DNA from: Salpingoeca rosetta
Lineage: Eukaryota; Protista; Choanoflagellata
Direction: 5' to 3'
Assembly: GCA_033442325.1 (NCBI GenBank)
Contig: JAWQFM010000027.1
Location: 67,844 to 131,843 of the forward strand
DNA: 64,000 nt
Shown here: positions 97 through 63,456 of the stretch, piece by piece
How positions within the stretch are numbered: the stretch's first letter is position 1
Layout of the letters: every line of letters begins with the position of its first letter
Made by a program: the position numbers and the translations under genes
Notes under the pieces: generated by a model
The model's database searches: none
Seen by the model: only the letters and a program-made list of their open reading frames with translations
What the model was told of the DNA's origin: nothing

Positions 97-220
97 CAGC
101 AGCTGCTTCTTGACAAACTCGTACGATACAAAATAAAATGGAGATCCAACAAGACCTGAGCGATTACGGCACCGAGTGCATGCACGCAAAGGAGCATGAG
201 ATGATGAAGATGATGATGAC

Positions 221-251
<31 letters not shown>

Positions 252-1364
252 CAATTCACAGCGATGCAAAACACAATGGTGCGAACACAGGGCATGGTTC
301 ATGGTGTCGAGTGCACTGGTGGTAGCACAACCGCAGGATCACCAGCAGTGCAGCACCAGCACACACGTACGTGTGAGGACGGTGATTCTGTATCCTGCAA
401 AGATGCCCTTGATGCCATCATGCGCGATGGTCTGACGAATAACATCAAAAGGACCGCTGTACTGCCGCTTGGCTCCAAACCGCTGCACCTGCGGAGATCA
501 ACACGTGAACACGTGTGTAGATGAGGCAGCAAGAATCGCAAGAGTCGTAAGTGAGACAAACGCATGAGCGAGCGAGAAGGCGATGACAAGACCAGCGCAG
601 CTGAAAGCACACACACGACTGCTGGAAAGTTTTGCACAGGCTCGTTGTGCGCGCGCACACGCACACACTCACTGACTCACGCACACGCACGCACATACAC
701 ACTCACACACACTGACTCACACACGCACACACACGCACACACATACACACACTCTCTCTCACTGACTCACACACACTCACACACACACTGACTCAAACAC
801 ACACACACACACATACACACACACACACAAATCATGCACCTGGAGGCGGCACTTGATCATTTCGACGGGCGCAAGGATGGTGCAGTAGACGGGAGCAGTC
901 ATGACGGCAGCAAGAACCACTTGCGGCATGGAAAGCGCGTCGGGTCTGGTGTCGAAAGCGGTCGCCACCACACGCTTCATAAAGCCGTTGGTGCCGAAGA
1001 GGGCGGCGTTCAACGCACCGGACATGACGATGGGCGGACCAACGCCCTTGTAGAAGCCTCGCAGGCCCTGGAGGAACGTGATGCGTGATGGGTACCGTTG
1101 GGAGAATATGGTCGAACGAGCGAGGGTGAGAGAGGGGCGAGGAGGAGCGACATCAAAACACATAACACACATGCAAGAACCGCCACAAGTACCACAAGTG
1201 TTCTCATAGGTCAGGTCACATGCACGCACCTCTTTCTGTGCCGTCTCTGACATGCAGTGCCATACGCCACGATAGTAGCTGCTACTTTGCATGCGGACCT
1301 GCGGGCACATGGGGGGGGGGGAGACATGACGAATGAGAGGTGCATGTGTGTGTATGCGCGCAAT

Positions 1365-1410
<46 letters not shown>

Positions 1411-1783
1411 AGTGTGGATAATCGATGAGCAATGACATCACCACCACAATCTCACGATCATCGCCATCACACACACACACACTCGCACATAAACACACAC
1501 ACACACACACACACACACACTCGAACATAAACACACACATACAAATACACTCACATACCATCACACACACCATCACACACACCATCACACACACCATCAC
1601 ACACACACACACACCATCACACACCTTCACAGTGTCGAGGGGGTGACCCACAAGGACCTGCAAGATGCCACCGACGGTGCCGCCCAACAGCTCTGCCGCA
1701 AGGCGACCTCCCTTGTCCCCATGGTTGGCCGTTGCGGCCTTTTTCCCATCATCACCCTCCTCCATGCTTATTCTCTCAACCAT
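97..1783 (-). CDS. Mitochondrial carrier (SLC25 family, carnitine/ornithine-carrier-like); spliced, 3' end runs off the window start
   Basis: Exons read GGTVGGILQVLVGHPLDTVK | VRMQSSSYYRGVWHCMSETAQKE | GLRGFYKGVGPP...LAPVEMIKCRLQ | VQRFGAKRQYSGPFDVIRQTIAHDGIKGIFAG | GSPFYFVSYEFVKKQLL. Contains Px[DE]xxK carrier signatures and GT-AG introns. Confidence 0.93.
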
Positions 1784-2177
1784 CTTCCTTCTTGTGAGTG
1801 TGAGCTTCTGATCTGATCTGACAGCTTTGCTTCTTCTGCTTCTGATGGCAGCGCACACGTGTGTATGTGCCGTTATTGGAAGCGTTGCGGCGCGTTGTTG
1901 TGTGCGATCCATTCAAGGCGCGTTGTTGTCTTTTGTGGTTTGCTTTCATATCATCTGAGTCAGCATTTATTTTCAACGGCCAATATCCAAACACCAAAGA
2001 CAACAACAGCACAGGCGCACGCGACAACAGAACAGACACGCGACAAGAAACACACGCGACACAGCCTTTGCTCTCTCTCGCTCTCTCTCACGGTCACCGT
2101 GTCTTCACCCTTTCCCGTGCCTCCCTTCCCACCACACCCACACACGTGCACACATACCACCAAGAGCAGCGGTAACA

Positions 2178-3444
2178 ATGTCTTCCATCTGGGCCAAGGC
2201 CAAGCAGCAGTGGACGTGCACCACGTGCTACTCTGGGAACCCACTGGACGTGAACAAGTGCCGCGCGTGCGAGGCTGCTCGGCCAGGGACAGCCGCAGCA
2301 GATGCCACGAAGAAGCCAGCCTCCGCCACCACAGGCGCGGACGCTGCCGGTGACAACAAGAAGCCTGCGTTCAAGTTTGGCGCAAGCACCAAGGCCGGTG
2401 ATGGCAAAGACGCTACCACCAAGGACGCCAGCAACAACAGCACCGCCACGACGAGCGGCAAGCCAGCCACCACTGGCGGATCCTCCATCTGGGCCAAGGC
2501 CAAGCAGCAGTGGACATGCTCTGCATGCTACTCTGGAAACCCACTGGACGTGGACAAGTGCCGTGCCTGCGAGGCCGCGCGGCCTGGTACCTCTGGTGTG
2601 AAGGAGGCAGCATCTGCCGATGCAAGTGCTGGTGAGACCGCTGCCAAGCCCGCATTCAAGTTTGGTGCCAGCACGAGCAGCACCGCAGGTACGGCTGCGC
2701 CTTCCAGCGGGTTCAAGTTTGGCGCCAGCAAGTCATCATCTACAACGACCCCCGCAACCACTGGCGGCTTTAAGTTTGGCGCCTCTTCATCCACAGCAAC
2801 CACCAAGCCCGCTTCCGGTGCGTTCCAGTGTCCGTCTGTGTAGGTGTGCGGGCGTTCATGTGTGTGTGTGTGTGTGTGTGTGTAGATGTGTGTGTGTGAG
2901 TGTGTGTGTAGATGTGTGTGAGTGTGTGCAGATGTGTGTGTGTGTGTGTAGATGTGTGTCTGTTCCTGTGTCTGTGTGAGCATTGCTTTGCTGCTTGATC
3001 GTGAAGCTGCTTCTTCCCCGCGCACTCCTTCATGGCTGCTGTGACCCATTTCTGCTCACTTGCGGGGTATTGCTGTGATGTTGGTGGCCAGGCGGGTTCA
3101 AGTTTGGAGCAAGCACGAGCACCTCCAAGCCGGCAGCGACGGGCGGCTTCAAGTTTGGAGCCGCAACAGCCAAGGACGAGGAGAAGAAGGGAGAGGACGG
3201 ACAGGAAGAAGACAAGGAAGAAGACAAGGAGGAAGACAAGGGGGAGGAGAAGGAGGAAGACAAGAAGGAAGACAAGGAGGAGGAGAAGGAGGAAGACAAG
3301 AAGCCTGCCACGCGTGCAACCCGCCGCACGACGCGCAGCGCCAAGAAGAAGGCTGAGGAGGAAGGCAGTGCCGAGGACGGTGATGCTGATGCTGATGCTG
3401 ATGCTGACGAGAACCAGCCCAAGAAGCGGGCAAAGCGCACGTGA
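2178..3444 (+). CDS. RanBP2-type zinc finger (x2) protein with FKFG repeats and acidic/basic tail; nucleoporin-like. Exons ~2178-2817 and 3092-3444
   Basis: Two W-x-C-x2-C-x3-N-x6-C-x2-C motifs (WTCTTCYSGNPLDVNKCRAC; WTCSACYSGNPLDVDKCRAC), six FKFG repeats, an E/K/D-rich tail, and a C-terminal PKKRAKRT NLS-like stretch. Confidence 0.85.
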
Positions 3445-3452
3445 GACACGCG

Positions 3453-3490
<38 letters not shown>

Positions 3491-4180
3491 ATCTTCCTTC
3501 TCCTTCTTCTTCTTTTTCCTCTTTTCTGTTCGTGTGGGCACAGCCACGCGATGGGTTGTTGGTTGTGTAGTGGGGGGGGATGATAAGTGACGAGAGGGGG
3601 CGCGGTTGTTGGGGGATGCGATCTGGTGGGCGATGAGGGTGGTAGCTGACTCTGATGATGGGCTGTGTGCTCCCGTGCTTTGACCGCACACATCAACCAG
3701 TAAACAAGACGAACAACACACACGCGCGCGCGCGGAATTTGATGCATCCATGGTTTGCGCCATTAGCAACTGTGGTGATGATGGGCGAAACTGCAAGCTT
3801 TAATCAGGACGCACAGGCAAACCACCACACTACACAGACATGCGTGTGCACAAACCACACGTGTACACGAACACATGCGCACACTTACGCACACACGTGG
3901 ACGAACAATGGCACAAACGACACAGGACGCACAGGACGACTAAGATAGAGCGAGAGGGGGGAGAGAGGAGGGGGCTGTTGGATTGGGTGTGGAGAGTGTG
4001 CACTCAGTTCTTGGAGAGAATGAATGAGAGGAAGAGAATACAGTGGAGGATTGAGACTGAAGCTGCCGTGTCGACAGGTTCATCATGGCTGATAGAGGAA
4101 GAGGGTGTTTGAAGGAGAGGGAGAGGCAAGAGGGGGATTGGGAGGGGAGCGAAGAGCGCCCCCGGGGGGGGGTGCACAGC

Positions 4181-38507: not shown

Positions 38508-39700
38508 TGTGTGTGTGTGTGTTCTTCAGGTTCAAGAAGCCATCACGCAATTACAAGAGCACACAGCACCGAACCCCCCCCCCCACACACACACACACAA
38601 AAGAAGTGAAACGCGTCCAATGGTGTCACCTTTGATATGACGGTTGACTTCCACCCGTGGTAGGTGTGGGTGTAGATGTCACCACGCCGCAGGTTCCCGG
38701 GGCAGTGGGAGAGCTGCACAGTGGAGATGGCGTGGTGCGTCATCAGGGGCAGGTTGGTTACTGGTGGAGAGGAAAAGGGGGTGGGGGGAGCGGGCAGTGA
38801 TGTGAACGTGAGAAATGGGAAGTGCTTGTGGGAAGGGATTGCGTGGTGTTGTGATGATCGAGAGTGGCATCAGCACTCACGCGAGGTGACATGTAAGAAA
38901 TGCCTACAAGAACAAAACGTGGACCATTGTTTCACGCACTCGTCGCCTTACCCGCTCACATATGCAAATGTAAGCGTGAACAAGTGTACACCCAGGTGCT
39001 TTTTCATCTGCTGGCACACATAAATAATGTACGCATGAACAAGTGCACACCCACCCAGCAGCTGATGTTCACCGGCCCACCCATTGACTTACGCGATGCC
39101 ACCTGCAGTGCACGGTTGAACGCCTCCTCCTCGGATCGCCCGTCGTCGGCGATGTCGGAGGTGAGGCGGACCTTGATTCCGACAACAAAGTCTGGATTTG
39201 CCTTGATGGCGGCAACAGCATCGTCCACGCGAACCTGCAGAGGTGGTGGTGGAGGGAAGGGTGTAATGAGCGAGCGCGTGCGATTAGCAAGCGCGTAAAA
39301 TGGCCGGGTGCAACAGATGGAGAGAAGAAAGGCAACGGGAAAGACAGCAAGAAAGACAGCAAGAAAGACAGCAAGAAAGACAGCAAGAAAGACAGCAAGA
39401 AGGATAGTGAACCGCATGCACACACACACACACACACGTACTTGGTTGAGGTTGTCGAGTTCGCCTCCTTTTGCACCACCGGCCATCCCACTCCACGCCA
39501 GACCCTGCACGAGGAACAGACAGAGAGATGCGTTTTTGAGGGTGTGGTTGGTAGGAGAGGATTGCTGGTGAGCGAAGCACGCCAAGATCGCACACAAAAC
39601 AAAAGATCACACAAACAGCACCACAAACAAACAAATATCACACAAACGAATATCACACAAACAACACACACACACACACACAAACGAATACCACACAAAC

Positions 39701-39767
<67 letters not shown>

Positions 39768-40541
39768 CCATGGCGATGTTGAGGAGAACGAGGATGCGTG
39801 TTTTCGATTTGTCGACAATGAACTTCTTGAGGCCGGCGAGTGTGCCCGCACCAGCACTTCCCGCGTCCACCGCTGTTTGGAGAGGAGAGGAGAGAGGGTG
39901 CCATGGATGCCATGGATGCCATGGATGTTGAAGCAGAAGATGAAATCCACTGCAATAAGGAAGGAACCGAAGAACCTCATCGCCGACCAAACACACATGT
40001 AAACAAACACACGTGCTCCCAAAACATGAAATGTCAACAAAACAATACACACAAAACAACACAACACACAACACACACACACATACACACTACACAAACA
40101 CACACAGCACAACACACAAACACACACACACACTACACAACCACACGCAACACACGTGCATGCGCGCACACCTGTGGTGACGCCGCGCTGAAGACAGTAA
40201 ACATCTGGGTTGATGCCGAGCGGGGTCGCCGCTTCATACACGTGCGTGTGCAGATCAATCAAGCCAGGCACGACGTACAGGTTGCGCGCATCGACCACAT
40301 TGATGGCACCGCTTGCCTCTGCCACATAGTGGGCTTCACCGCAGGGGTCGTGTGGTGCGACGGTGATGACCTTCCCGTCTCGTAAGAGCACGTCTCGGAC
40401 GGCGTCGATGCCCAGGCCGTGGTCAATGACATGGCCGCCCCACAGCACCGTGTCTGGCTCGTTTGGGCGTGCAAAGGATCGGCCAGCCTCGCTCGCCTTG
40501 TACGAGATGCCAAGCCCAATCTCGTCGTTTGCTCCCTCCAT
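36885..40541 (-). CDS. Metal-dependent amidohydrolase/deacetylase, bacterial dihydroorotase-like (PRK09237 / EF_0837 / Atu3266-type); ~8 exons
   Basis: VPGLIDLHTHVY, RGVTT|AVDAGSAG, VVGIKVRL, PLMTHH, LRRGDIYTHTYHG, GVIFDVGHGAGAFSW, PDVISTDLH, TVMSKFLHLGM, IGSLRAGTAADVTLL. Confidence 0.92.
38268..38510. repeat. (GTAT)n tetranucleotide microsatellite in an amidohydrolase intron
   Basis: Directly visible. Confidence 0.95.
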
Positions 40542-41216
40542 CGCTGCTGTTGTGTGGTTTGTTGGTGTGGGTGATTTGATGCGATGCGATGTCTTCTGTG
40601 GTGATGTCTTCTGTGATGTGTGCTGATGTGGCTGTGATGCCTGCTTCCTCTGCTCAATCAAGTCCACGCACCACCAGTTCGTGCCACCCGCTCACGCTCG
40701 CGTGCCTCGGCGACCACAGCAGCTGCAACAGACACAAGTGTCAAAACAATGTTTGGAGTGGCGCACCTGTGAGTGAGGTTGCTGTTAATGAAGTTGCATG
40801 GCATGCATGCACACGCAAGCAGAAAAGGGGCATGAACAAAACCTTCGCCAATCATAATTTGTGTCATGTCACTCACTTAAGTCCCGCTCGTGGCTGCTTG
40901 ACATGCAGATGTGTTTCGCTTGCTTGCCTGGCCTGTTACTGATTCCTTCCATCACCGTTGCGTTTTGCCTTCGTGCCCATGTCAAGCGCACTCTACATCC
41001 GCACTTATGTTAGTCATCCTTCGCTGCTTCGCTGCTTCGAAGTGGTAAGAGTGTCCCGTACTTGCCCAAACAACTGAAGTCAGTCGAGTAGAACAAACCT
41101 GAATTCAGTGTCAGACACACAAACACAAACAAACAACAACACTCGCTCGCTTTGCTTGCTTGCTTGAAGGCCAGTGCTCACAACAACCACCACAACAACA
41201 ACCACCACCACCAACA

Positions 41217-44200
41217 ATGGTGTCTTGGTTGGCAATGCTGGCGGTACTGGCAATGCTGGCGGTAGCCGCGTGTCCTGTTGTTGGTGGTGTGAGCAATCGC
41301 CTCCGTGACCCCACTCACGGGGCCACCGCCCGTGCTGAGATTCGCGCTCGCGTCGTTGGAGAGCTGCATCTTGAGTATGAGCCGTGGGTCATGTCGAGCA
41401 AGACTGCATCGTGGTTGCGCGATGACCCAGACATTGCCACCGTGTACCGACGCTATGTGCTGTCGCTCCTCATCCCTTCGGACAAGATTGCCTCTGCCGT
41501 TCACGGCTACAACACCTTCATGCAGCATTTTGTGCCTTCAAACTGCACCTGGTCTGACATTGACTACGCTTCCAAAGCAAGGGCAGAGTAAGTGCGTTGT
41601 GCGTGCGTGTGTGTGTTGTGTTTGAGATTCCCTGGCTCGAGTGCACATGACTCCTTTGCTGTAGACTGTCGGCTGTTGGTGTGTACGGCTTCTTGGGGGA
41701 TGGGTTTTTATCTCGCGTCTCTTCGTCGTCTGTGCACTTGCTATTGCTGTTCTGTGTCACGTGTTGCGATTGGTAGTACGACCAACTTTCCCCAGCATCC
41801 CCCAGCCTCGACTGTGCCTCGCCACAAGCTCATCAACTCCTCACATCACCCATTGTCCCTGCGCCCTCAATATGTCTCCACAACGCATCACAACAACACT
41901 CCACACAACACCACAACACCACAACACCACGCCACACCACAACCACACCACCACCACACCACAAACGCAACACCACACCACTCCACACAACACCACAACA
42001 CCACAACACCACGCCACACCACAACCACACCACAACCACACCACCACCACACCACAAACGCAACACCACACTACAACCACACCACACTACAACCACACCA
42101 CACCACAACACACCGCAACACCACACCACACCACACCACAACGCAACACACCACACACCATTTGCAGCTGGCCTGCAGGCGACCACATGTCGAGGGTGGA
42201 GGACATGGCGCAGCTGCTGATGACGCCAGCATCTCCGCTGTACAGGAACAAGACACTCACCAACCAGACCACGTGCGCCCTGCACGCGTGGACAACACGC
42301 GACATGCAGAACCCAAACTGGTGGTGGAACGACATTGGCATCCCACAGCTCATGGGCCACACGCTGCTGCTACTCACCCCCGACACTGTGCCGCGCTCCA
42401 GCGAGATTGCGCAGGTGGCGCAGCGCATCATGGACCGGGCCAGGTGGTGGACAATGACCGGCGCCAACCGCATCTGGGAGCTCAACATCAAGATCATGCA
42501 GGGCCTCTTCTTCAACAATGCCAGCCTCGTCGCCACGGGCTTCTCCAACGTGTACGCGGCCGTCGCGTTTGTGCACCAGCCGCTGGAAGGCATCCAAGTG
42601 GACGGCAGCTTCCACCAGCACGGGCCGGAGCTGCTGGCGGGGTCATATGGGGCGGACTTCACCGCCACCATCCTCGGCCTGCTGCAGTTCTCCAGCGGTA
42701 CGCGCTTCTACATGGACGCGGCCCACATGGCCGTGTATGCGCGCCTGGTGCTTGACGGGCAGCAGTGGATGGTGGCCGGCCACCGGCAGCAGGACTGGTC
42801 CGTTATTGGCCGCGAGATTACGCGCCCAAGCGGAGTCCACACGTGGACCTTCAGCCCAACGCAGTTGCGCAACGTCACGGCCGGCAACCGCACGCAGGAG
42901 TTCCACGCCTTTGCAGACTGGCTGGACGGAGTGTCTGGCGCCAAGCCCGTGACGGGGGCGCGGTACTACTACGACAGCGACTATGGCGTGATGCACACGC
43001 CCACGCACGTGGCGTCCGTGCGCATGTACTCGAAGCGGACCGTGAACGCGCGCTGCGTGAACGACGAGGGCACGCAGTCCGAGCACACCGCGGATGGGGT
43101 GGTGAACCTGTACTACGATGGTCACGAGTACGACGGCATCTACCCTGTCTGGGACTGGAAGCAGCTGCCTGGCACCACCATCCCGCAGTATCCACAGACG
43201 CCATCATGTGCCACCACAACACGCCTGTCGCCGCACGGGTTTGTGGGCGGGGTTGTCGCCGGCGATGGCTCGTTGCTTACAGGCATGCAGCTGTCGACGC
43301 ACGGGTTGGATGTGCTGCGCGTATTTGTTGTCCGCCCAGAGGCCATCATCACCGTCGACGCCTTTGCCAACTTCACAAGCAGCGCCGACCCCTCGTTGCC
43401 GCTTTCACAGCGGTCACCCTCCTTGACGCAACAGTCACCTCCTTCCCCCTCTTCATCGCCCTCCACTCCATCTCCACACACCACCACCGCCACCACCACC
43501 CTGTCATCGGCGTCTGTGCCTGTTCTGACCACGGCCGCCAACCGACTGCTGAGTGGAAACGTGACTGTCAAGCTGGCAAACGAGACAGCACCACGCGTGC
43601 TTGCTCGCGGCGAGCACAACTTCACGGCGGGTCTGGTGCAGTGGGTGCACCACGCCAACACCGGGTACACGTGTGTCGACGGCGGCGGTGGTGGTGATGC
43701 TGGAAGCAAGGGATGTGCCGCTGCTGTGCGTGTTGTCAACACACAGCAGAGCGGAGACTGGTCGCTGATTGGCGTGGCATCAGGCAAGGTGCAGCGCGAC
43801 GTGTTTGCCCTCATGTACAACCACGGCACGTCCCTGTCCTCGGCCTCCTTCGCCCACGCCGTCCTGCCTTCTGTGGCGTCACCCACGGATATGGAGCACG
43901 CCGTGGCCGCCATCAGGGCCGCCACCACCATCGCCACCGCCCGGGGTGCGGCTGTCTCTGTCCTCGTTGCACCGACAAGCGCCACCTCTTCACAGCAGGA
44001 CGCCGCAAATCGGCATACAGGAGCGGGGTACATGGCGTACCACGTGGTGGCATCGGGTGGTGACACCGCTTTCCCATTGCACGCCGTCACGGCTGCCGAC
44101 GCACCCGCCTTCATTGCCGCCCAAGCCGCCTCCGCAACAACTGGAGCAACAACAACAACAGCCGCAAGAACAGCATGGCGTGGTGGTGCGGTGACAACAA

Positions 44201-44349
44201 AGCTGACGAGCGTGTGTGTCAGCAGCCCTGTGCACAGCGGGCCAATCCACGTCAAGCTTGCTGCCAACACCACGTGCAATGCAGCCACCCTCACCCTCAC
44301 CCTTCCCGATGGCGATCACAAGGGACAGTCTGTCCACCACACGTGCTGA
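41217..44349 (+). CDS. Secreted polysaccharide lyase family 8 (chondroitin AC/hyaluronate lyase-type); exons ~41217-41588 and 42168-44349
   Basis: Signal peptide MVSWLAMLAVLAMLAVAAC. Motifs WSDIDY, NPNWWWNDIGIP, MTGANRIW, EGIQVDGSFHQHGPELLAGSYG, SVIGREITRP, SVRMYSKRT, WDWKQLPGTT, FVGGV. Confidence 0.93.
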
Positions 44350-57963: not shown

Positions 57964-60848
57964 GCGTGCGTTGCAGAGGGACCCATAACTTGAGATTGAA
58001 CGAGCCATTCCGTTTTGCTTTTCCCCTCTCACACCAAGTGTCTCTGTGCATGCTGCAGGAGAAAGAAGGCACGGTGTCTGGCATTGTGTACACGAAGAGC
58101 GCACTGCCCTCAACCACGCCCGTCGACCTCAGCGGTCGCAAGATGGTCGCCCCGCCAACCGAAGCCAAGAAGTCCGTGGCTATGCTTGTCTGTGTGCGTG
58201 TGTCTGTCTGTGTGTATATATGTGTGTGTGCGCGCATGTGTGAGTGTCTGTGTGTGTGTGTGTGTGTGTCTGTGTCTGTGTCTGTGTGTCTGCGTCTGTG
58301 TGTTTGTCTGTCTGCCTATGCATTTGTGCGTGTCACTCGTTTGGTTGTCTCCTTGCTTCTGCGTCTGCGTGTCTCGTTCATGTACATGTGCGCTTGCGTG
58401 CGCGCGTTGAATTGCCAGTCCGGCCGCGGCCATCCTTATTCCCGTTTGTCTATCCCTCCCGACTCCTTCCTCGTTGCAGCGTCCTCTCTGTTCCTTCCTA
58501 CTCTCCCTCCCCATCCGCCTGTGTTGCTGCTCACATGCCCGCACAACCACCATCTCCATCCACCCATCCACCTACCACCACCACCACCACCACCATCATC
58601 ATCATCACCACCACCACCCTCCCCCCATGCAGGAACATCCGTGACACGATTGTGGACACGAGCAAGTTCCGTGGTCGCGTCGCCACGTATTCAGGCTCGA
58701 CGGCAGCACAGCGCGGTGCGCAATGGTGATGGGATTTTGTTTTTGGTTTTGCAGGCATGCAGCTCACCCTGCTTGAACTGTGTTTTTGGCGCTCTGTTTG
58801 TTGGTGTCCATCTCTCACGTAACAACTCATCACATGATCGATCCATCGCTTCGCTTGATACACACACACACACACACGAACAGCCAAGGCAAAGCCTGCT
58901 GCTGCAGCCAAGCCCAAGCCTGCGGCAAAGCCCAAACCTGCACCTGCTGAGAAGCCCAAGCCAGCCGCCAAGCCAAAGACGGCTGAAAAGCCTGCTGAGA
59001 AGCCAGCACCTGCTGAGAAGCCGCCCGTGCTCGCACGCAAACCGTCCGTCAACCGCAAGCCTTGTACGCCATCGCCTGTGCGTGTGTTGTGTGTGTGTTG
59101 TGTGTGTATGTGTTTGGGAGGAGTTCAGTACGTGCTGCCTTCTTGTTCTTGCTGACATGTTTGTCCGTGTGTATGTGTATCTGTCTTCTCTTTGCGTGTG
59201 TCTGTGTGTGTGTGTTGTTTTTTTTTTGGACAGCGGTTGGCGCCAAACCGAAGCTCGCAGCCAAGCCCAAGCCCGCTGTGAACGGTCACACGAACCAGGA
59301 CACTCAGGACAAGTCCAAGGTGTGCTGCTGTATGTGTGTGTGCGTGCGTGTGTGCGTGCCCCCGCGCGCGGTTGTTGTTCGTTTACTACTGCGCTCTTGC
59401 TTGAAAAACACTCACCCTTGCTGGCACATGCCCACGCACACATACATCCCATGGCCCTTGCACCTTTGCAATACTCCATGGTCTCAGTTCGTCGCCGAGA
59501 AGACCGCCCCAGCCACTGGCGAGGGTGGCCGACGCAGCACATGGGTACACGCACGCACGCACGCACGCACTACAGCATGCATTGCTACAGGCGTCCTCGA
59601 TATGGACCCGCTGTGTTGTGTGACCATCACGCACGCCGATACACACACACACACACTGACACAATTACGCACACACATCACAAACATGACACATACTTAC
59701 TCACACACTGATTTACTCACGCTGACACACACCATCCCCGGTATCATACGTCATGTGTGAGCAGAGCATGTCGAGCGGGCCGATCATTGAGGACGCGGAC
59801 GAGCGCGCCCGTCTCCGCGCGGAGGCGAGGAAGGCCAAGCGCGAGGCAGCCGCAGCCAGGGTGAGCACACATTGCGTGTGCACCTGTGTTTATGTGTGGT
59901 GCTACTGTTGACAGCAACTCTTGGCTGCACCCGCGTACAGCTGTTGGAAGCAACTGTGAGCAACTCTTCTCTCACGGTCCTCTGCTGCTTTCATGCATGT
60001 TGTCATCAAACACACACACACAACACACACACACAACACACACACACAACACAACACACACACCACACAACACACACACACACAACACATGCTGTCCCTG
60101 TGCCTGCTGCAGGCGCGGGAGGAGGCGCGTGCGGTGCGGATGGCAGCGATGGGATCACCGGCAACGCGGCGGTCGCGCAAGGCGGCGGCGGCGCAGCCCG
60201 TGGTGGTGGACGATGATGGAGACGAGGGCGACAAGGGGGCGGTCGTGGTCGATGCGAAGAAGAAGGAAGAGGAGGAGGAGGAGGAACAGCGCAAGCAGGA
60301 GGAGGAGGAAGAACGGGAGAGGAAGGAGGAAGAAGAGGCTGCTGCGAAGAAACAAGCCGAAGAGGAAGAACGGGAGAGGAAGGAGGAGGAGGCAAGGAAG
60401 CAAGCTGAGGAGGAAGAGGCAGCCAAGAAGCAAGCTGAGGAGGAAGAGGCTGCCAAGAAGCAAGCTGAGCAAGAGGAAGAGAGGAAGAAGAAGGAAGAGG
60501 AGGAGGAGGCTGCCAAGAAGCGAGCTGAGCAAGAGGAAGAAGAGAAAGCACGCAAAGAACAAGAGAAGAAGAAGTCATCGGGCAAGGCATCTCTCTTTGA
60601 GGATGATGAGGAGGACTTTGACGAAGACGAGCTCTTTGTAAGCATGCGAAACAGTTGGTTCTCGGTTGGCGTTGGCTCGTGTCATATTGCATCGTCACGT
60701 GCTCGCGTATCCACCCCATCGTGCTCACACACTACACACACACACACACGCACCATGTTTTTCTCAGGGAAAGAAGGCGGCCGAGCAGCCAAAGAAGACG
60801 ACATCGTCCCTCTTTGCTGACGACGACGACGACGAGGACGAGGCAGAG
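56648..60848 (+). CDS. ADF-H (coactosin/drebrin/Abp1-type) actin-binding protein with K/P/A linker, E/K coiled coil and LF-acidic motifs; 3' end probably in the gap
   Basis: DVRSDATDTDWCAIGY...GSGSGG...LQDD | AYFCLLRLLDGDQESKRVKFVALTYVGEGV...RARVGVH...| IAGGADYD is a coactosin-like ADF-H domain. Later exons splice in frame to SLFEDDEEDFDEDELF | ...SSLFADDDDDEDE. Confidence 0.87.
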
Positions 60849-60989
<141 letters not shown>

Positions 60990-61769
60990 NNNNNNNNNNN
61001 NNNNNNNNNNNNNNNNNNNNNNNNNNNNNNNNNNNNNNNNNNNNNNNNNNNNNNNNNNNNNNNNNNNNNNNNNNNNNNNNNNNNNNNNNNNNNNNNNNNN
61101 NNNNNNNNNNNNNNNNNNNNNNNNNNNNNNNNNNNNNNNNNNNNNNNNNNNNNNNNNNNNNNNNNNNNNNNNNNNNNNNNNNNNNNNNNNNNNNNNNNNN
61201 NNNNNNNNNNNNNNNNNNNNNNNNNNNNNNNNNNNNNNNNNNNNNNNNNNNNNNNNNNNNNNNNNNNNNNNNNNNNNNNNNNNNNNNNNNNNNNNNNNNN
61301 NNNNNNNNNNNNNNNNNNNNNNNNNNNNNNNNNNNNNNNNNNNNNNNNNNNNNNNNNNNNNNNNNNNNNNNNNNNNNNNNNNNNNNNNNNNNNNNNNNNN
61401 NNNNNNNNNNNNNNNNNNNNNNNNNNNNNNNNNNNNNNNNNNNNNNNNNNNNNNNNNNNNNNNNNNNNNNNNNNNNNNNNNNNNNNNNNNNNNNNNNNNN
61501 NNNNNNNNNNNNNNNNNNNNNNNNNNNNNNNNNNNNNNNNNNNNNNNNNNNNNNNNNNNNNNNNNNNNNNNNNNNNNNNNNNNNNNNNNNNNNNNNNNNN
61601 NNNNNNNNNNNNNNNNNNNNNNNNNNNNNNNNNNNNNNNNNNNNNNNNNNNNNNNNNNNNNNNNNNNNNNNNNNNNNNNNNNNNNNNNNNNNNNNNNNNN
61701 NNNNNNNNNNNNNNNNNNNNNNNNNNNNNNNNNNNNNNNNNNNNNNNNNNNNNNNNNNNNNNNNNNNNN
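60990..61769. other. Assembly gap (780 N) flanked by (CA)n
   Basis: Run of N. Confidence 1.
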
Positions 61770-61770
61770 C

Positions 61771-61836
<66 letters not shown>

Positions 61837-63456
61837 AAACACACACCAAACACACACACACACTACACACACACACTACACACACACACGCACGCACACA
61901 CACGCACGCACCACACCAAACAAGCACACCAAACAAGCACATCCGTCGCCATTGATGCAATCTTTCTGCGGGTTGGGTGGGGTGGTCGTTCTGCCCCATT
62001 TCGATTTGGTTGATGCGCATGACATCATTTTTCTCGGAACTGACGGTCCCGCGCGCGTATCGTGGCGTGTTGCTGTTTTGGTTTTGGTGACTTGCACAAG
62101 TTGTTTGGCAAGGCTGAGTTGCCGCAAGCACCGGCAACAACGCAACACCCGCCAGAAGTCGCAGGCCAGTTCCAGGAAGCCGCAGTCACCCTCCCCTTTC
62201 CGACCCTTGTTCGCTTCCTGGAAAAATATGGCCTGCTCCCCCATCCTGACTTTGACGGTGCGCTTTTGCTTGTCCGCGTGCTTGTGTTGCTGGCTTTGGC
62301 TGCTTGTTGTGTGCGATTTTGCGTTCGGCACAACTGGCGTTTGGTTCGTTTGAAACTTCGCGCTTACTCGTTCAACTCACTTTTGCCGCATCTTCATGTA
62401 ATATTCAGGGACCCCTGACGGATTGCGTGAGTTTGTTGAGGCTTGTTGATGACGTTGCGTTTGGTTGACCACGTTGCGAGGCCGCTCGAATTCGCAGAAG
62501 CGCCGACTTCTTGGAATTGCATTGCAGTAAACAAGGGTCTTCCATGCTGTGACGAACTTGTCCAACACAGCCACATCCAAAGAATCAAGCAACACACGCC
62601 ACACGCACACATGCGCACGCTGCATTGTCCCTTTCAGTTTAGCTGTCCCCCCAATACCCTCAAAGAGAAGCAACCACTCACGAAGGCTAGACCGGTGGTG
62701 GCTGGGCGCAGGCAGCTCACTCACTCACTCACACATACGCAAGAAGCAACCGCAAAACAGTGTGCAGCCGATGCATGTTTGAGTGTGCGTGTGCGTGTGT
62801 GTTTGACAGTCTGCATGCCCATTTCCCACTTGTCAACACACGAGCAACAGCAACGGTCGCACACACAGCCCCACAGCTACACATATCATCATCCGCTCCC
62901 ATCTACGCCGAAGCAACCACGACCACACTCTCTTCCATGTTGGTGTGGCACCCCCGCATCCAACTGCAGCCCCCACACTCTTCCGTCTCTCCTTTCCCTG
63001 TTGGCTTGATTGCTTGAGCGTGCACCACCCTGCAAGTGACAAGCACAGCCCCTTCTCACTCAAACACACACACATAGCACACACATACACACAGACATAC
63101 ACAGCCACACACGCACGCACACACACAGCCACACACGCATTCACACACGCACGCAAACATACCCATCCCGGGTCTTCTTTTTACATTGATCAACCGTCTC
63201 CTCTCCTCCCCCCCCCCCTCCTCCCAACGTCGCTACACCGCCCCTTCTCTTATCCACATCAGTTGCTTGGATGTCGTCCTCAGTGGCACTCCACAACCCC
63301 AGCCACACCTCTTCCCCTGCCTCCCTTTCCTCTGCCCCTTGTTCTCCGCTCTCCTCCGCGGCGTCGTCCCTCTGCCCAGGTGACGACCCCCTCCCGTCCA
63401 AACACACCGCAGCAGGCGTCTGCCCCTTTGACCTTCTCCGCCTTGCGGTTGTGTTC

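What the first reader, a model, noticed from the sequence alone, without database searches (positions are those of the whole stretch)
41217..44349. Endogenous secreted PL8 glycosaminoglycan lyase, the same class as the bacterial mating inducer EroS
Seen: signal peptide and apparently intact catalytic residues, namely Asn (TGAN), His and Tyr nine residues apart (HQHGPELLAGSY) and Arg (GREI). There is only one intron in 3.1 kb, whereas most neighbours have several. Known: PL8 lyases are mainly bacterial, with the same His/Tyr spacing as chondroitinase AC. Vibrio fischeri EroS, a chondroitin lyase, triggers swarming and mating in S. rosetta. Inference: a horizontally acquired lyase that could act as a self-made mating or matrix-remodelling signal, or digest prey capsules. 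The EroS link depends on the organism guess.
Basis: partly seen in the sequence, partly recalled or inferred. Interest (0 to 1): 0.78.

Follow-up and report, generated by a model that had tools for sequence, protein, structure and literature searches.

The report
Known choanoflagellate PL8 lyase gene
This is a real, intact gene for a secreted chondroitinase-AC-like polysaccharide lyase of the choanoflagellate Salpingoeca rosetta, but the gene, its bacterial look and its possible link to the bacterial mating inducer EroS are already published; the one new detail is that its lineage has swapped one of the five conserved active-site residues (Glu to Arg).

Summary
Window 41217-44349 (+) is a two-exon gene: exon 1 is 41217-41587, the GT-AG intron is 41588-42167, and exon 2 is 42168-44349. 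It encodes 850 aa with an N-terminal signal peptide.

- **Family and fold:** Pfam finds Lyase_8_N and Lyase_8. The AlphaFold model of exon 2 (pLDDT 88) best matches F. heparinum chondroitinase AC (TM 0.78/0.84).
- **Active site:** Asn, His, Tyr (His+9) and Arg sit on the catalytic residues of chondroitinase AC.
- **Identity:** CDS length, protein length, intron count and GC equal the published values for S. rosetta PTSG_10136 (EGD79853, F2UQE8).
- **Prior publication:** S. rosetta GAG lyases, their bacterial affinity and a possible endogenous role in mating are published (Richter 2017/18; Matriano 2021). The scan reached the same verdict on the paralogue on other DNA (s1-431414).
- **Origin:** Recent transfer is not supported. 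The gene sits in a eukaryote-only clade with Monosiga brevicollis and the S. rosetta paralogue. The nearest bacterial proteins are only 30-39% identical.
- **New here:** The Glu of the PL8 Tyr-His-Arg-Glu tetrad is Arg in all nine orthologues. It is acidic in 80/80 nearest bacterial relatives, in the solved PL8 structures shown in alignment, and in the paralogue.

Activity, substrate and expression remain untested.

The parts
41217..41587 (+). Exon 1 (123 codons + 2 nt): start codon, signal peptide, first helices of the N-terminal alpha-helical domain
   Evidence: ORF and splice donor GTAAGT. Its C-terminal part aligns with M. brevicollis homologue residues 74-127.
41217..41288 (+). Predicted signal peptide MVSWLAMLAVLAMLAVAACPVVGG
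   Evidence: It is the only strongly hydrophobic segment of the protein (sequence checked). The orthologues P0006 and P0007 and the paralogue also start with hydrophobic leaders. Rule-based call only; no SignalP was run.
41588..42167 (+). Single spliceosomal intron (580 nt), GT-AG, with a UG-rich 5' end and a long CA/CCA-rich 3' part
   Evidence: The family motif DIDYx4RxxWx4H is restored across the junction. A fold of the intron shows the two ends pairing, but the energy is no better than shuffles (z +2.6).
42168..44349 (+). Exon 2 (726 codons + stop): rest of the alpha-domain, super-sandwich domain and C-terminal beta-sandwich
   Evidence: Pfam Lyase_8_N and Lyase_8. PDB phmmer 1cb8/1hm2 at 2e-42. 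AF2 model pLDDT 87.9, pTM 0.89. Foldseek 1cb8 at E 1e-41, TM 0.78/0.84.
42316..42324 (+). NWW substrate-cleft motif (equivalent to Asn125-Trp126-Trp127 of chondroitinase AC)
   Evidence: Alignments; codons checked. Binding role from PMC8733870.
42466..42468 (+). Catalytic Asn (TGAN; = Asn175 of chondroitinase AC)
42619..42648 (+). Catalytic His151 ... Tyr160 (HGPELLAGSY; = His225/Tyr234), spacing +9
42811..42825 (+). Arg215 and Arg219 (GREITR; = Arg288 and Arg292)
43051..43068 (+). RCVNDE: Arg295 in the place of the tetrad Glu (Glu371). Asn298 and Glu300 (= Asn374, Glu376) are conserved.
   Evidence: Ungapped alignment to 1cb8/1hm2, 7r2x and 2wco, which all have Glu. Arg in 9/9 clade members and Glu in the paralogue. 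Acidic in 80/80 nearest bacterial loci.
43399..43506 (+). Ser/Pro/Thr-rich low-complexity loop inserted in the super-sandwich domain, specific to this species
   Evidence: pLDDT < 50 at residues 411-446. Absent from all seven aligned relatives. It splits the Pfam Lyase_8 match in two.
43924..44346 (+). Divergent C-terminal beta-sandwich (no Pfam Lyase_8_C hit), ending in a clade-conserved Cys
   Evidence: Strands 586-725 are modelled with mostly high confidence. The full-length structural match to 1cb8 covers 736 columns. The terminal Cys is conserved in the eukaryotic clade and the paralogue.

Best explanation
The locus is the annotated Salpingoeca rosetta gene PTSG_10136 (EGD79853, UniProt F2UQE8).

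Shown:
- It encodes an 850-aa soluble protein of the secretory pathway, with a signal peptide, many N-glycosylation sequons, and no membrane anchor.
- It has the complete three-part architecture of a family-8 polysaccharide lyase of the chondroitinase-AC type: an alpha-helical toroid, a super-sandwich, and a C-terminal beta-sandwich.
- It belongs to an old, eukaryote-only clade that includes Monosiga brevicollis and the second S. rosetta PL8 gene. The clade is nested among bacterial chondroitinase-AC-like enzymes. Any transfer from bacteria was therefore ancient and predates the divergence of these choanoflagellates.

Inferred:
- It cleaves a uronic-acid polysaccharide by beta-elimination. Asn100 and His151 would neutralise or position the carboxylate, Tyr160 would act as base/acid, and Arg215/Arg219, NWW and Asn298/Glu300 would bind the chain.
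- The likeliest substrate is the chondroitin or chondroitin-6-sulfate that S. rosetta itself makes. The likeliest role is turnover or remodelling of its own matrix.
- The clade-wide replacement of the tetrad Glu by Arg means that rate, pH optimum or specificity probably differ from the bacterial enzymes.
- A role as a self-made trigger of swarming or mating is possible but unsupported.
For: - Gene model and identity with PTSG_10136. Genome size 55.4 Mb against the published ~55 Mb.
- Family: Pfam; PDB sequence search; AF2 model and Foldseek.
- Active-site residues.
- Secretion features.
- Clade and age. Contigs of P0007 and P0058 are eukaryotic. Shared derived Cys and other residues with the paralogue. 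No bacterial relative above 39% identity.
- Purifying selection: the active-site motifs are invariant in clade members that are only 31-54% identical overall.
- Substrate context: S. rosetta makes chondroitin and chondroitin-6-sulfate but no other GAG. F. heparinum chondroitinase AC, the closest solved relative, itself induces swarming.
Against: - The Glu of the PL8 Tyr-His-Arg-Glu tetrad (the equivalent Glu653 of chondroitinase ABC I is among the residues implicated by mutagenesis) is Arg here. Canonical activity is therefore not assured.
- PL8 substrates cannot be read from sequence. The second-best solved match is a fungal mannuronate-specific lyase and others are xanthan lyases.
- I could obtain no expression evidence for this gene. 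PTSG_10136 is absent from the differential-expression lists of Fairclough 2013 that are held.
- Picomolar exogenous chondroitinase triggers swarming. A constitutively secreted active chondroitinase would therefore be hard to reconcile with normal cultures unless it is tightly regulated or confined.
- The position of Arg295 relative to the catalytic residues could not be checked in 3-D, because no coordinates were available to me.
Confidence: 0.7

Rival explanations
1. Prey-digestion or antibacterial enzyme. The lyase is delivered to food vacuoles or secreted to depolymerise acidic capsular or biofilm polysaccharides of bacteria (chondroitin- or hyaluronan-like capsules, alginate, xanthan-type polymers), for nutrition or defence rather than for the cell's own matrix.
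For: - Choanoflagellates are bacterivores.
- M. brevicollis up-regulates 'polysaccharide lyases' on exposure to P. aeruginosa, and the authors propose them as antibacterial effectors.
- PL8 includes alginate and xanthan lyases among the structural neighbours.
- The altered active site (Arg for Glu) would fit a non-chondroitin substrate.
- A signal peptide is equally compatible with lysosomal or vacuolar targeting.
Against: - The paper does not say which lyase family or gene responds. MONBRDRAFT_33216 was not found in the text or the held supplements.
- The closest characterised relative by far is a chondroitinase AC.
- The organism makes chondroitin itself.
Confidence: 0.3
2. Endogenous counterpart of EroS. 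The enzyme is released on starvation, trims the cell's own chondroitin sulfate, and thereby triggers swarming and mating without bacteria.
For: [quoted passage not shown]
- F. heparinum chondroitinase AC, the closest solved relative, works as an inducer.
- Starvation alone induces mating.
- The idea is voiced by Matriano et al., citing Woznica et al..
Against: - There is no expression, activity or genetic evidence of any kind.
- Starvation-induced mating is slow and rare (<2% after 11 days), whereas picomolar enzyme acts in 30 minutes.
- The tetrad Glu is missing. The paralogue keeps it, but lacks the Arg292 equivalent.
- Orthologues occur in choanoflagellates in which no such mating response is known.
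Confidence: 0.12
3. Catalytically impaired, lectin-like protein. With Arg in place of the tetrad Glu, the fold binds but does not cleave glycosaminoglycan, and serves as a matrix-binding or sensing protein.
For: - Arg replaces an acidic residue that is invariant in 80/80 nearest bacterial relatives and in the solved PL8s shown in alignment.
- The equivalent Glu653 of chondroitinase ABC I is among the residues implicated in catalysis by mutagenesis.
- An extra positive charge would favour binding of polyanions.
Against: Asn, His, Tyr, both Arg, NWW and Asn298/Glu300 remain conserved across clade members that are only 31-54% identical. That pattern is what one expects of an active enzyme. Pseudo-enzymes usually lose the base/acid residues as well.
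Confidence: 0.12
4. Recent horizontal transfer or bacterial contamination of the assembly.
For: - High Alien Index (126) with a Phycisphaerae best hit.
- Only one intron.
- Long open exon.
- CDS GC of 0.63 is somewhat above the window's typical 0.53-0.60.
Against: - It has a canonical spliceosomal intron of the local UG.../...CA type.
- It lies inside a eukaryotic contig between intron-rich genes.
- The best bacterial identity is 30-39%.
- It sits in a eukaryote-only clade with M. brevicollis and the paralogue.
- It carries species-specific low-complexity inserts typical of the host genome.
Confidence: 0.02

Closest known systems
Flavobacterium (Pedobacter) heparinum chondroitinase AC, PDB 1CB8/1HM2 (CAZy PL8)
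   Same: Best sequence match (E 2e-42; family profile E 1e-202) and best structural match (TM 0.78/0.84, rmsd 3.1 A over 736 columns). Same three-domain fold. Asn175, His225, Tyr234, Arg288, Arg292, Asn125-Trp-Trp, Asn374 and Glu376 are all identical in aligned positions.
   Different: About 20% identity overall. Glu371 is Arg. It carries a 36-43-residue Ser/Pro/Thr insert in the beta-domain. The C-terminal domain is too divergent for Pfam Lyase_8_C. It has a eukaryotic signal peptide, sequons, conserved extra cysteines and a spliceosomal intron.
S. rosetta PTSG_09797 (EGD79387), the second PL8 gene (G000 contig 31; scan note s1-431414)
   Same: Same genome and same family. It is sister to this gene's clade in both trees (96-97% SH-aLRT). 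It shares derived residues including two cysteines, has a signal peptide, and carries low-complexity inserts.
   Different: About 30% identical. It keeps the tetrad Glu but lacks the Arg292 equivalent and has a one-residue insertion between His and Tyr. Matriano et al. report it as choanoflagellate-specific and keep it as an HGT candidate. It is listed as swimmer-enriched in Fairclough 2013.
Monosiga brevicollis MONBRDRAFT_33216 and unnamed eukaryotic homologues (P0001-P0007, P0058)
   Same: Orthologue clade. Full-length alignment at 31-54% identity. Same Glu-to-Arg replacement (NARCV), no Pfam Lyase_8_C hit (weak in P0058), C-terminal Cys.
   Different: They lack the S/P/T insert. P0007 has no intron at the S. 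rosetta intron site.
Vibrio fischeri EroS (VF_A0994), the bacterial mating inducer
   Same: Same Pfam families PF08124 and PF02278. The catalytic His and Tyr are essential in EroS.
   Different: EroS also matches PF02884 and is an experimentally proven chondroitin/hyaluronan lyase. The nearest bacterial relatives of this gene are Acidobacteriota, Planctomycetota, Armatimonadota and Verrucomicrobiota, not Vibrio.
Paradendryphiella salina PL8 mannuronate-specific alginate lyase, PDB 7R2X
   Same: A eukaryotic (fungal) secreted PL8. It is the second-best distinct solved relative by sequence (E 7e-26) and has the same fold.
   Different: It retains the tetrad Glu. Its different substrate shows that PL8 specificity cannot be inferred from family membership.

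Membership tests
CAZy PL8 / Pfam Lyase_8 polysaccharide lyases | N-terminal (alpha/alpha) toroid domain (Lyase_8_N) | tested here: met
   PF08124 at E 2.4e-23, above the curated cut-off. Helices 3-252 in the model.
CAZy PL8 / Pfam Lyase_8 polysaccharide lyases | Central super-sandwich domain (Lyase_8) | tested here: met
   PF02278 at E 5e-47, in two stretches split by a low-complexity insert.
CAZy PL8 / Pfam Lyase_8 polysaccharide lyases | C-terminal beta-sandwich (Lyase_8_C) | tested here: inconclusive
   No PF02884 hit. However, the model has a folded beta-domain at 586-725, and the alignment to 1cb8 spans the whole chain.
CAZy PL8 / Pfam Lyase_8 polysaccharide lyases | Catalytic His and Tyr nine residues apart, plus Asn | tested here: met
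   N100, H151 and Y160 align with Asn175, His225 and Tyr234 of 1hm2.
CAZy PL8 / Pfam Lyase_8 polysaccharide lyases | Arg of the Tyr-His-Arg-Glu tetrad | tested here: met
   R215 = Arg288, an invariant column in 55 sequences.
CAZy PL8 / Pfam Lyase_8 polysaccharide lyases | Glu of the Tyr-His-Arg-Glu tetrad | tested here: not met
   R295 in the place of Glu371. An acidic residue is present in 80/80 bacterial relatives. The tetrad is described in PMC13113925. The assignment of Glu371 as the tetrad Glu of chondroitinase AC rests on my own knowledge of the 1CB8/1RWA literature.
CAZy PL8 / Pfam Lyase_8 polysaccharide lyases | Beta-eliminative cleavage of a uronate-containing polysaccharide | not testable with these tools
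   Needs an enzyme assay (A232).
Chondroitin AC lyase (EC 4.2.2.5) subgroup | Closest characterised relative is a chondroitin AC lyase; activity on chondroitin sulfate A/C and hyaluronan | tested here: inconclusive
   The nearest solved protein is chondroitinase AC. Xanthan and mannuronate lyases follow closely, and specificity is not deducible from sequence. CAZy subfamily assignment (dbCAN) was not available.
EroS-like mating inducers | Induces swarming/mating of S. rosetta through chondroitinase activity | not testable with these tools
   Bioassay needed. Only family-level similarity is shown.
Horizontally transferred gene (recent, lineage-specific) | Close bacterial donor, and absence from sister eukaryotic lineages | tested here: not met
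   Best bacterial identity is 30-39%. There is an orthologue in M. brevicollis and in other eukaryotic contigs, and they form one eukaryotic clade. The literature reports 18/21 choanoflagellates.

The most novel reading that the evidence does not exclude
The PTSG_10136 orthologue clade is a re-tuned PL8 enzyme in which Arg has replaced the tetrad Glu. The change is accompanied by clade-specific changes in the His-Tyr loop (Q154E, Y156L, G159S) and at N457A. This could give the enzyme a specificity or regulation unlike any bacterial chondroitinase. One possibility is an enzyme aimed at a particular sulfated motif of the choanoflagellate's own proteoglycans, which the cell uses as its endogenous, starvation-linked switch for adhesion, swarming or mating. 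That would make EroS a bacterial mimic of a host enzyme.
Probability: 0.1. Interest if true: 0.75.

Novelty: already known. Interest (0 to 1): 0.3.

Why it matters
[quoted passage not shown] An endogenous enzyme able to do it would explain bacteria-independent (starvation) mating, and it would show that GAG-based matrix signalling predates animals.

The gene and the idea are already in the literature, so the finding is not a discovery. What this check adds is practical for anyone who wants to test the idea:
- The published gene model agrees in CDS length, protein length, intron count and GC with the model derived here, and the splice junction is supported by conservation.
- The protein folds as a complete chondroitinase-AC-like enzyme.
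- The two S. rosetta paralogues descend from one ancient eukaryotic gene.
- This paralogue and all its orthologues carry Arg instead of the conserved tetrad Glu. The other paralogue keeps the Glu but lacks the Arg292 equivalent.

Both genes therefore need to be assayed and knocked out, singly and together, and Arg295 is an obvious position to mutate.

Tried and rejected
- **Expression in the literature.** PTSG_10136 is absent from the held supplementary lists of Fairclough 2013 and of the 2026 Cupidon preprint. No paper in the library mentions PTSG_10136, PTSG_09797 or F2UQE8 in its main text.
- **The Cell 2017 EroS paper.** It could not be read. I used its preprint, which does not mention an endogenous lyase.
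- **Named sponge, cnidarian or filasterean orthologues.** Two word-based protein searches, one with a single sequence and one with the clade profile, returned only M. brevicollis as a named eukaryote. The window's own protein and its paralogue were not listed. The Atlas search gave only bacterial clusters. The broad eukaryotic distribution therefore rests on Richter et al. and Matriano et al.
- **The big representative-protein search.** Not run.
- **3-D check of Arg295.** Model coordinates are not exposed, so contacts with His151, Tyr160, Arg215 or Glu154 could not be measured.
- **Intron structure.** The ends pair in the predicted fold, but the energy is worse than shuffles, so I make no claim.
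- **Neighbour intron counts.** PTSG_10133-10139 were not in the held part of Table S1.
- **Spliced model.** The only use of both exons together was a count of total length and GC inside one script.
- **Tree artefacts.** In the tree, two bacterial rows (L029, L056) were evidently the wrong open frame (branches of 4.7-7.3) and should be ignored.
Full report
**What is there**

The + strand between 41217 and 44349 carries a two-exon gene. An ATG at 41217, preceded by ACA and with no in-frame ATG upstream, opens a frame that runs to a canonical donor AG|GTAAGT at 41587/41588. A 580-nt intron follows, UG-rich at its 5' end and CA/CCA-rich over its 3' half. It ends at TTTGCAG|C (42167/42168). A single 2182-nt exon then runs to TGA at 44347-44349. 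The junction is phase 2 (GA|C, Asp). It is supported by conservation: the family consensus DIDYxxxxRxxWxxxxH is restored exactly across it. The same stretch is continuous in the Monosiga brevicollis protein and in a metagenomic eukaryotic homologue.

The only joint use was a count of length and GC.

**Identity of gene and organism**

The two exons add up to 2553 nt, or 850 codons, with one intron and GC 0.629. Table S1 of Matriano, Alegado and Conaco (Sci Rep 2021, PMC7971027) lists exactly these values for EGD79853 = PTSG_10136 = UniProt F2UQE8 of Salpingoeca rosetta: 2553, 850, 1, 0.629. It also lists Pfam PF02278;PF08124 and GO 'extracellular region'.

The window's genome is 55.4 Mb, as published for S. 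rosetta. It holds exactly one further PL8 gene, on contig 31. This matches the 'two chondroitin sulfate lyase genes' of that paper. Another agent of this scan independently named the organism (s1-436032) and examined the paralogue (s1-431414).

**Family and fold**

- Exon 2 matches Pfam Lyase_8 (5e-47) and Lyase_8_N (2e-23).
- Its best solved relative by sequence is F. heparinum chondroitinase AC (2e-42). The fungal mannuronate-specific PL8 7R2X follows.
- A profile of 55 family members hits chondroitinase AC at 1e-202.
- An AlphaFold2 model of exon 2 is confident (pLDDT 87.9, pTM 0.89).
- Foldseek places the model on 1CB8 with TM 0.78/0.84 and rmsd 3.1 A over the whole chain, ahead of xanthan, alginate, chondroitin AC and hyaluronate lyases.
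- The model shows a folded C-terminal beta-sandwich (residues 586-725 of exon 2), although Pfam Lyase_8_C is silent.
- The only long disordered stretch is a Ser/Pro/Thr-rich loop (411-446; window 43399-43506). It is absent from all aligned relatives, including the closest one, and it splits the Pfam domain match in two.

**Secretion**

The first 24 residues, MVSWLAMLAVLAMLAVAACPVVGG, are the only strongly hydrophobic segment. There are 11 N-X-S/T sequons, 10 cysteines, no second hydrophobic segment and no C-terminal anchor signal. The paralogue and the orthologues with complete N-termini also begin with hydrophobic leaders. This is a rule-based call; no signal-peptide predictor was available.

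**Active site**

In an ungapped alignment, N100, H151, Y160 and R215 of exon 2 fall on Asn175, His225, Tyr234 and Arg288 of chondroitinase AC. These columns are invariant or nearly so in 55 relatives. The substrate-cleft residues named for this enzyme type are also conserved: Asn125-Trp-Trp, Arg292, Asn374 and Glu376 (PMC8733870).

PL8 enzymes are described as having a Tyr-His-Arg-Glu tetrad (PMC13113925). The equivalent Glu653 of chondroitinase ABC I is among the residues implicated by crystallography and mutagenesis (PMC8684500). In the column of Glu371 of chondroitinase AC, this protein has Arg (R295, window 43051-43053). That Glu371 is the tetrad Glu of chondroitinase AC rests on my own knowledge of the 1CB8/1RWA papers.

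The alignment is ungapped and anchored on both sides: SKRT....NxE. Three observations set the Arg apart:
- The three solved PL8s shown in alignment, chondroitinase AC, the fungal mannuronate lyase and the S. coelicolor lyase, have Glu there.
- All 80 nearest bacterial loci have Glu or Asp. The 11 apparent exceptions are a one-residue-insertion subtype with an NTD motif.
- The S. rosetta paralogue has Glu.

By contrast, all nine members of this gene's orthologue clade have Arg within an invariant NARC[VI] motif.

The same clade carries a few other private, conserved changes. Three lie in the loop between the catalytic His and Tyr (Q154E, Y156L, G159S). One is at N457A.

The paralogue lacks the Arg292 equivalent and has an extra residue between His and Tyr. 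Neither S. rosetta enzyme is therefore fully canonical.

**Origin**

The closest proteins in the large database are the following:
- two sequences from a marine eukaryote catalogue (45% identity);
- several unnamed metagenomic or transcriptomic proteins;
- M. brevicollis MONBRDRAFT_33216 (35% identity over the full length);
- bacterial PL8s at about 30% and below.

The contig of P0007 also carries Tubby, oxysterol-binding and ADAM genes. The contig of P0058 has a GT-AG intron whose removal restores the sulfatase signature CTPARAGLLTGR. Both contigs are eukaryotic.

I built two trees with different bacterial samples. In both, these sequences and the S. rosetta paralogue form one clade (SH-aLRT 96 and 97). 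The clade is nested in a group of Acidobacteriota, Planctomycetota, Armatimonadota and Verrucomicrobiota enzymes. The paralogue is a long branch, so its place is less sure. It does share derived residues with the clade, including two cysteines.

The best bacterial identity among 185,579 species' genomes is 30-39%. The simplest reading is a single old eukaryotic gene, ultimately perhaps of bacterial origin. It duplicated before the lineages sampled here diverged, and the Glu-to-Arg change arose after the duplication.

This agrees with Richter et al., who found GAG lyases in 18 of 21 choanoflagellates, sponges and cnidarians and inferred presence in the choanozoan ancestor. It also agrees with Matriano et al., who flagged EGD79853 by Alien Index (126; best hit a Phycisphaerae 'chondroitinase-AC precursor' at 29.8%) but excluded it from their final HGT set because it is not choanoflagellate-specific.

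The single intron and long exon are real, and the 862-aa frame is the longest in the window. They are not evidence of recent arrival: the eukaryotic homologues P0005, P0007 and P0058 are likewise called as long uninterrupted frames.

**What it probably does**

S. rosetta makes unsulfated and 6-sulfated chondroitin and no other GAG. [quoted passage not shown] The F. heparinum AC enzyme, this protein's closest solved relative, works as an inducer.

The most economical function is a secreted or vacuolar beta-eliminase acting on chondroitin-type chains, used to turn over or remodel the cell's own matrix. Because exogenous enzyme is so potent, an endogenous one must be tightly regulated, confined, or different in specificity. 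The Arg substitution could be part of that.

The alternatives are these:
- a digestive or antibacterial lyase; M. brevicollis induces unspecified 'polysaccharide lyases' on P. aeruginosa;
- a self-made mating trigger;
- a lyase-dead GAG-binding protein.

I could obtain no expression data. The paralogue is listed as swimmer-enriched.

**Novelty and verdict**

[quoted passage not shown] So are its candidate bacterial origin and the suggestion that the endogenous lyases might regulate mating or matrix remodelling. The scan reached the same verdict on the paralogue on other DNA (s1-431414).

The finding is therefore correct but already known. Its 'recent HGT' flavour is not supported.

As far as the searched library shows, the following are new:
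- the clade-wide Glu-to-Arg replacement in the catalytic tetrad;
- the complementary deviation in the paralogue;
- the structural presence of a C-terminal domain that Pfam misses;
- the species-specific mucin-like insert;
- support for the published gene model, which matches the model derived here in CDS length, protein length, intron count and GC.

Interest is modest (0.3). It would rise if the altered active site proved to underlie an endogenous mating or adhesion switch.

Noticed in passing
L001 (G000 contig 31: 655565-659533), ORF 154-3603: The second S. rosetta PL8 gene is one uninterrupted 1149-codon frame with a signal peptide, long poly-Ser and poly-Asn/Thr tracts and poly-Gln runs. 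The published model PTSG_09797 has 819 aa and 2 introns, so the low-complexity tracts may have been annotated as introns. This agrees with scan note s1-431414 that the model is questionable. It is listed as swimmer-enriched in Fairclough 2013 additional file 12 (SwB 11.5 against 1.5-6.9 elsewhere).
   Followed up: partly
window 41588-42167: The intron has a UG-rich 5' end (GUGCGUUGUGCGUGCGUGUGUGUGUUGUGUUUG) and about 290 nt of CA/CCA-rich repeats at its 3' end. In the predicted fold the two ends pair and bring the splice sites together, as scan note s1-440604 proposes for other introns. The total energy is nevertheless worse than shuffles (z +2.6).
   Followed up: partly
P0039 (865 aa, 19 member sequences, Logan assemblies): A protein that combines BNR/sialidase repeats (PF13859, PF13088) with Lyase_8_N and Lyase_8, 41% identical to this protein over 44% of it. 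It is a sialidase-PL8 fusion of unknown organism.
   Followed up: no
window 60001-62000: A 2-kb block with GC 0.34 and AT skew +0.58, against 0.51-0.63 GC elsewhere in the window. Open frames of more than 370 codons occur in five frames across the two strands. This points to a long A-rich low-complexity or repeat block.
   Followed up: no
window 39069-40667 (-): The upstream neighbour on the opposite strand carries an amidohydrolase-like motif (...VVPGLIDLHTHVYE...). It is interrupted by (TG)n/(CA)n-rich stretches that read as poly-Cys/Val in frame, so it is probably an intron-rich gene.
   Followed up: no
L004 11880-11990 (JGI metagenome contig Ga0493797_01794037): The contig that carries the PL8 homologue P0058 also carries a sulfatase gene. 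Its active-site signature CTPARA|GLLTGR is split by a ~95-nt GT-AG intron. This is a eukaryotic contig with a PL8 lyase and a sulfatase about 2.6 kb apart, a possible GAG-degrading pair.
   Followed up: partly
PMC8592570 (Woznica et al. 2021): M. brevicollis is reported to induce 'polysaccharide lyases' in response to Pseudomonas aeruginosa. Whether the orthologue MONBRDRAFT_33216 is one of them could not be established from the text or the held supplements.
   Followed up: partly
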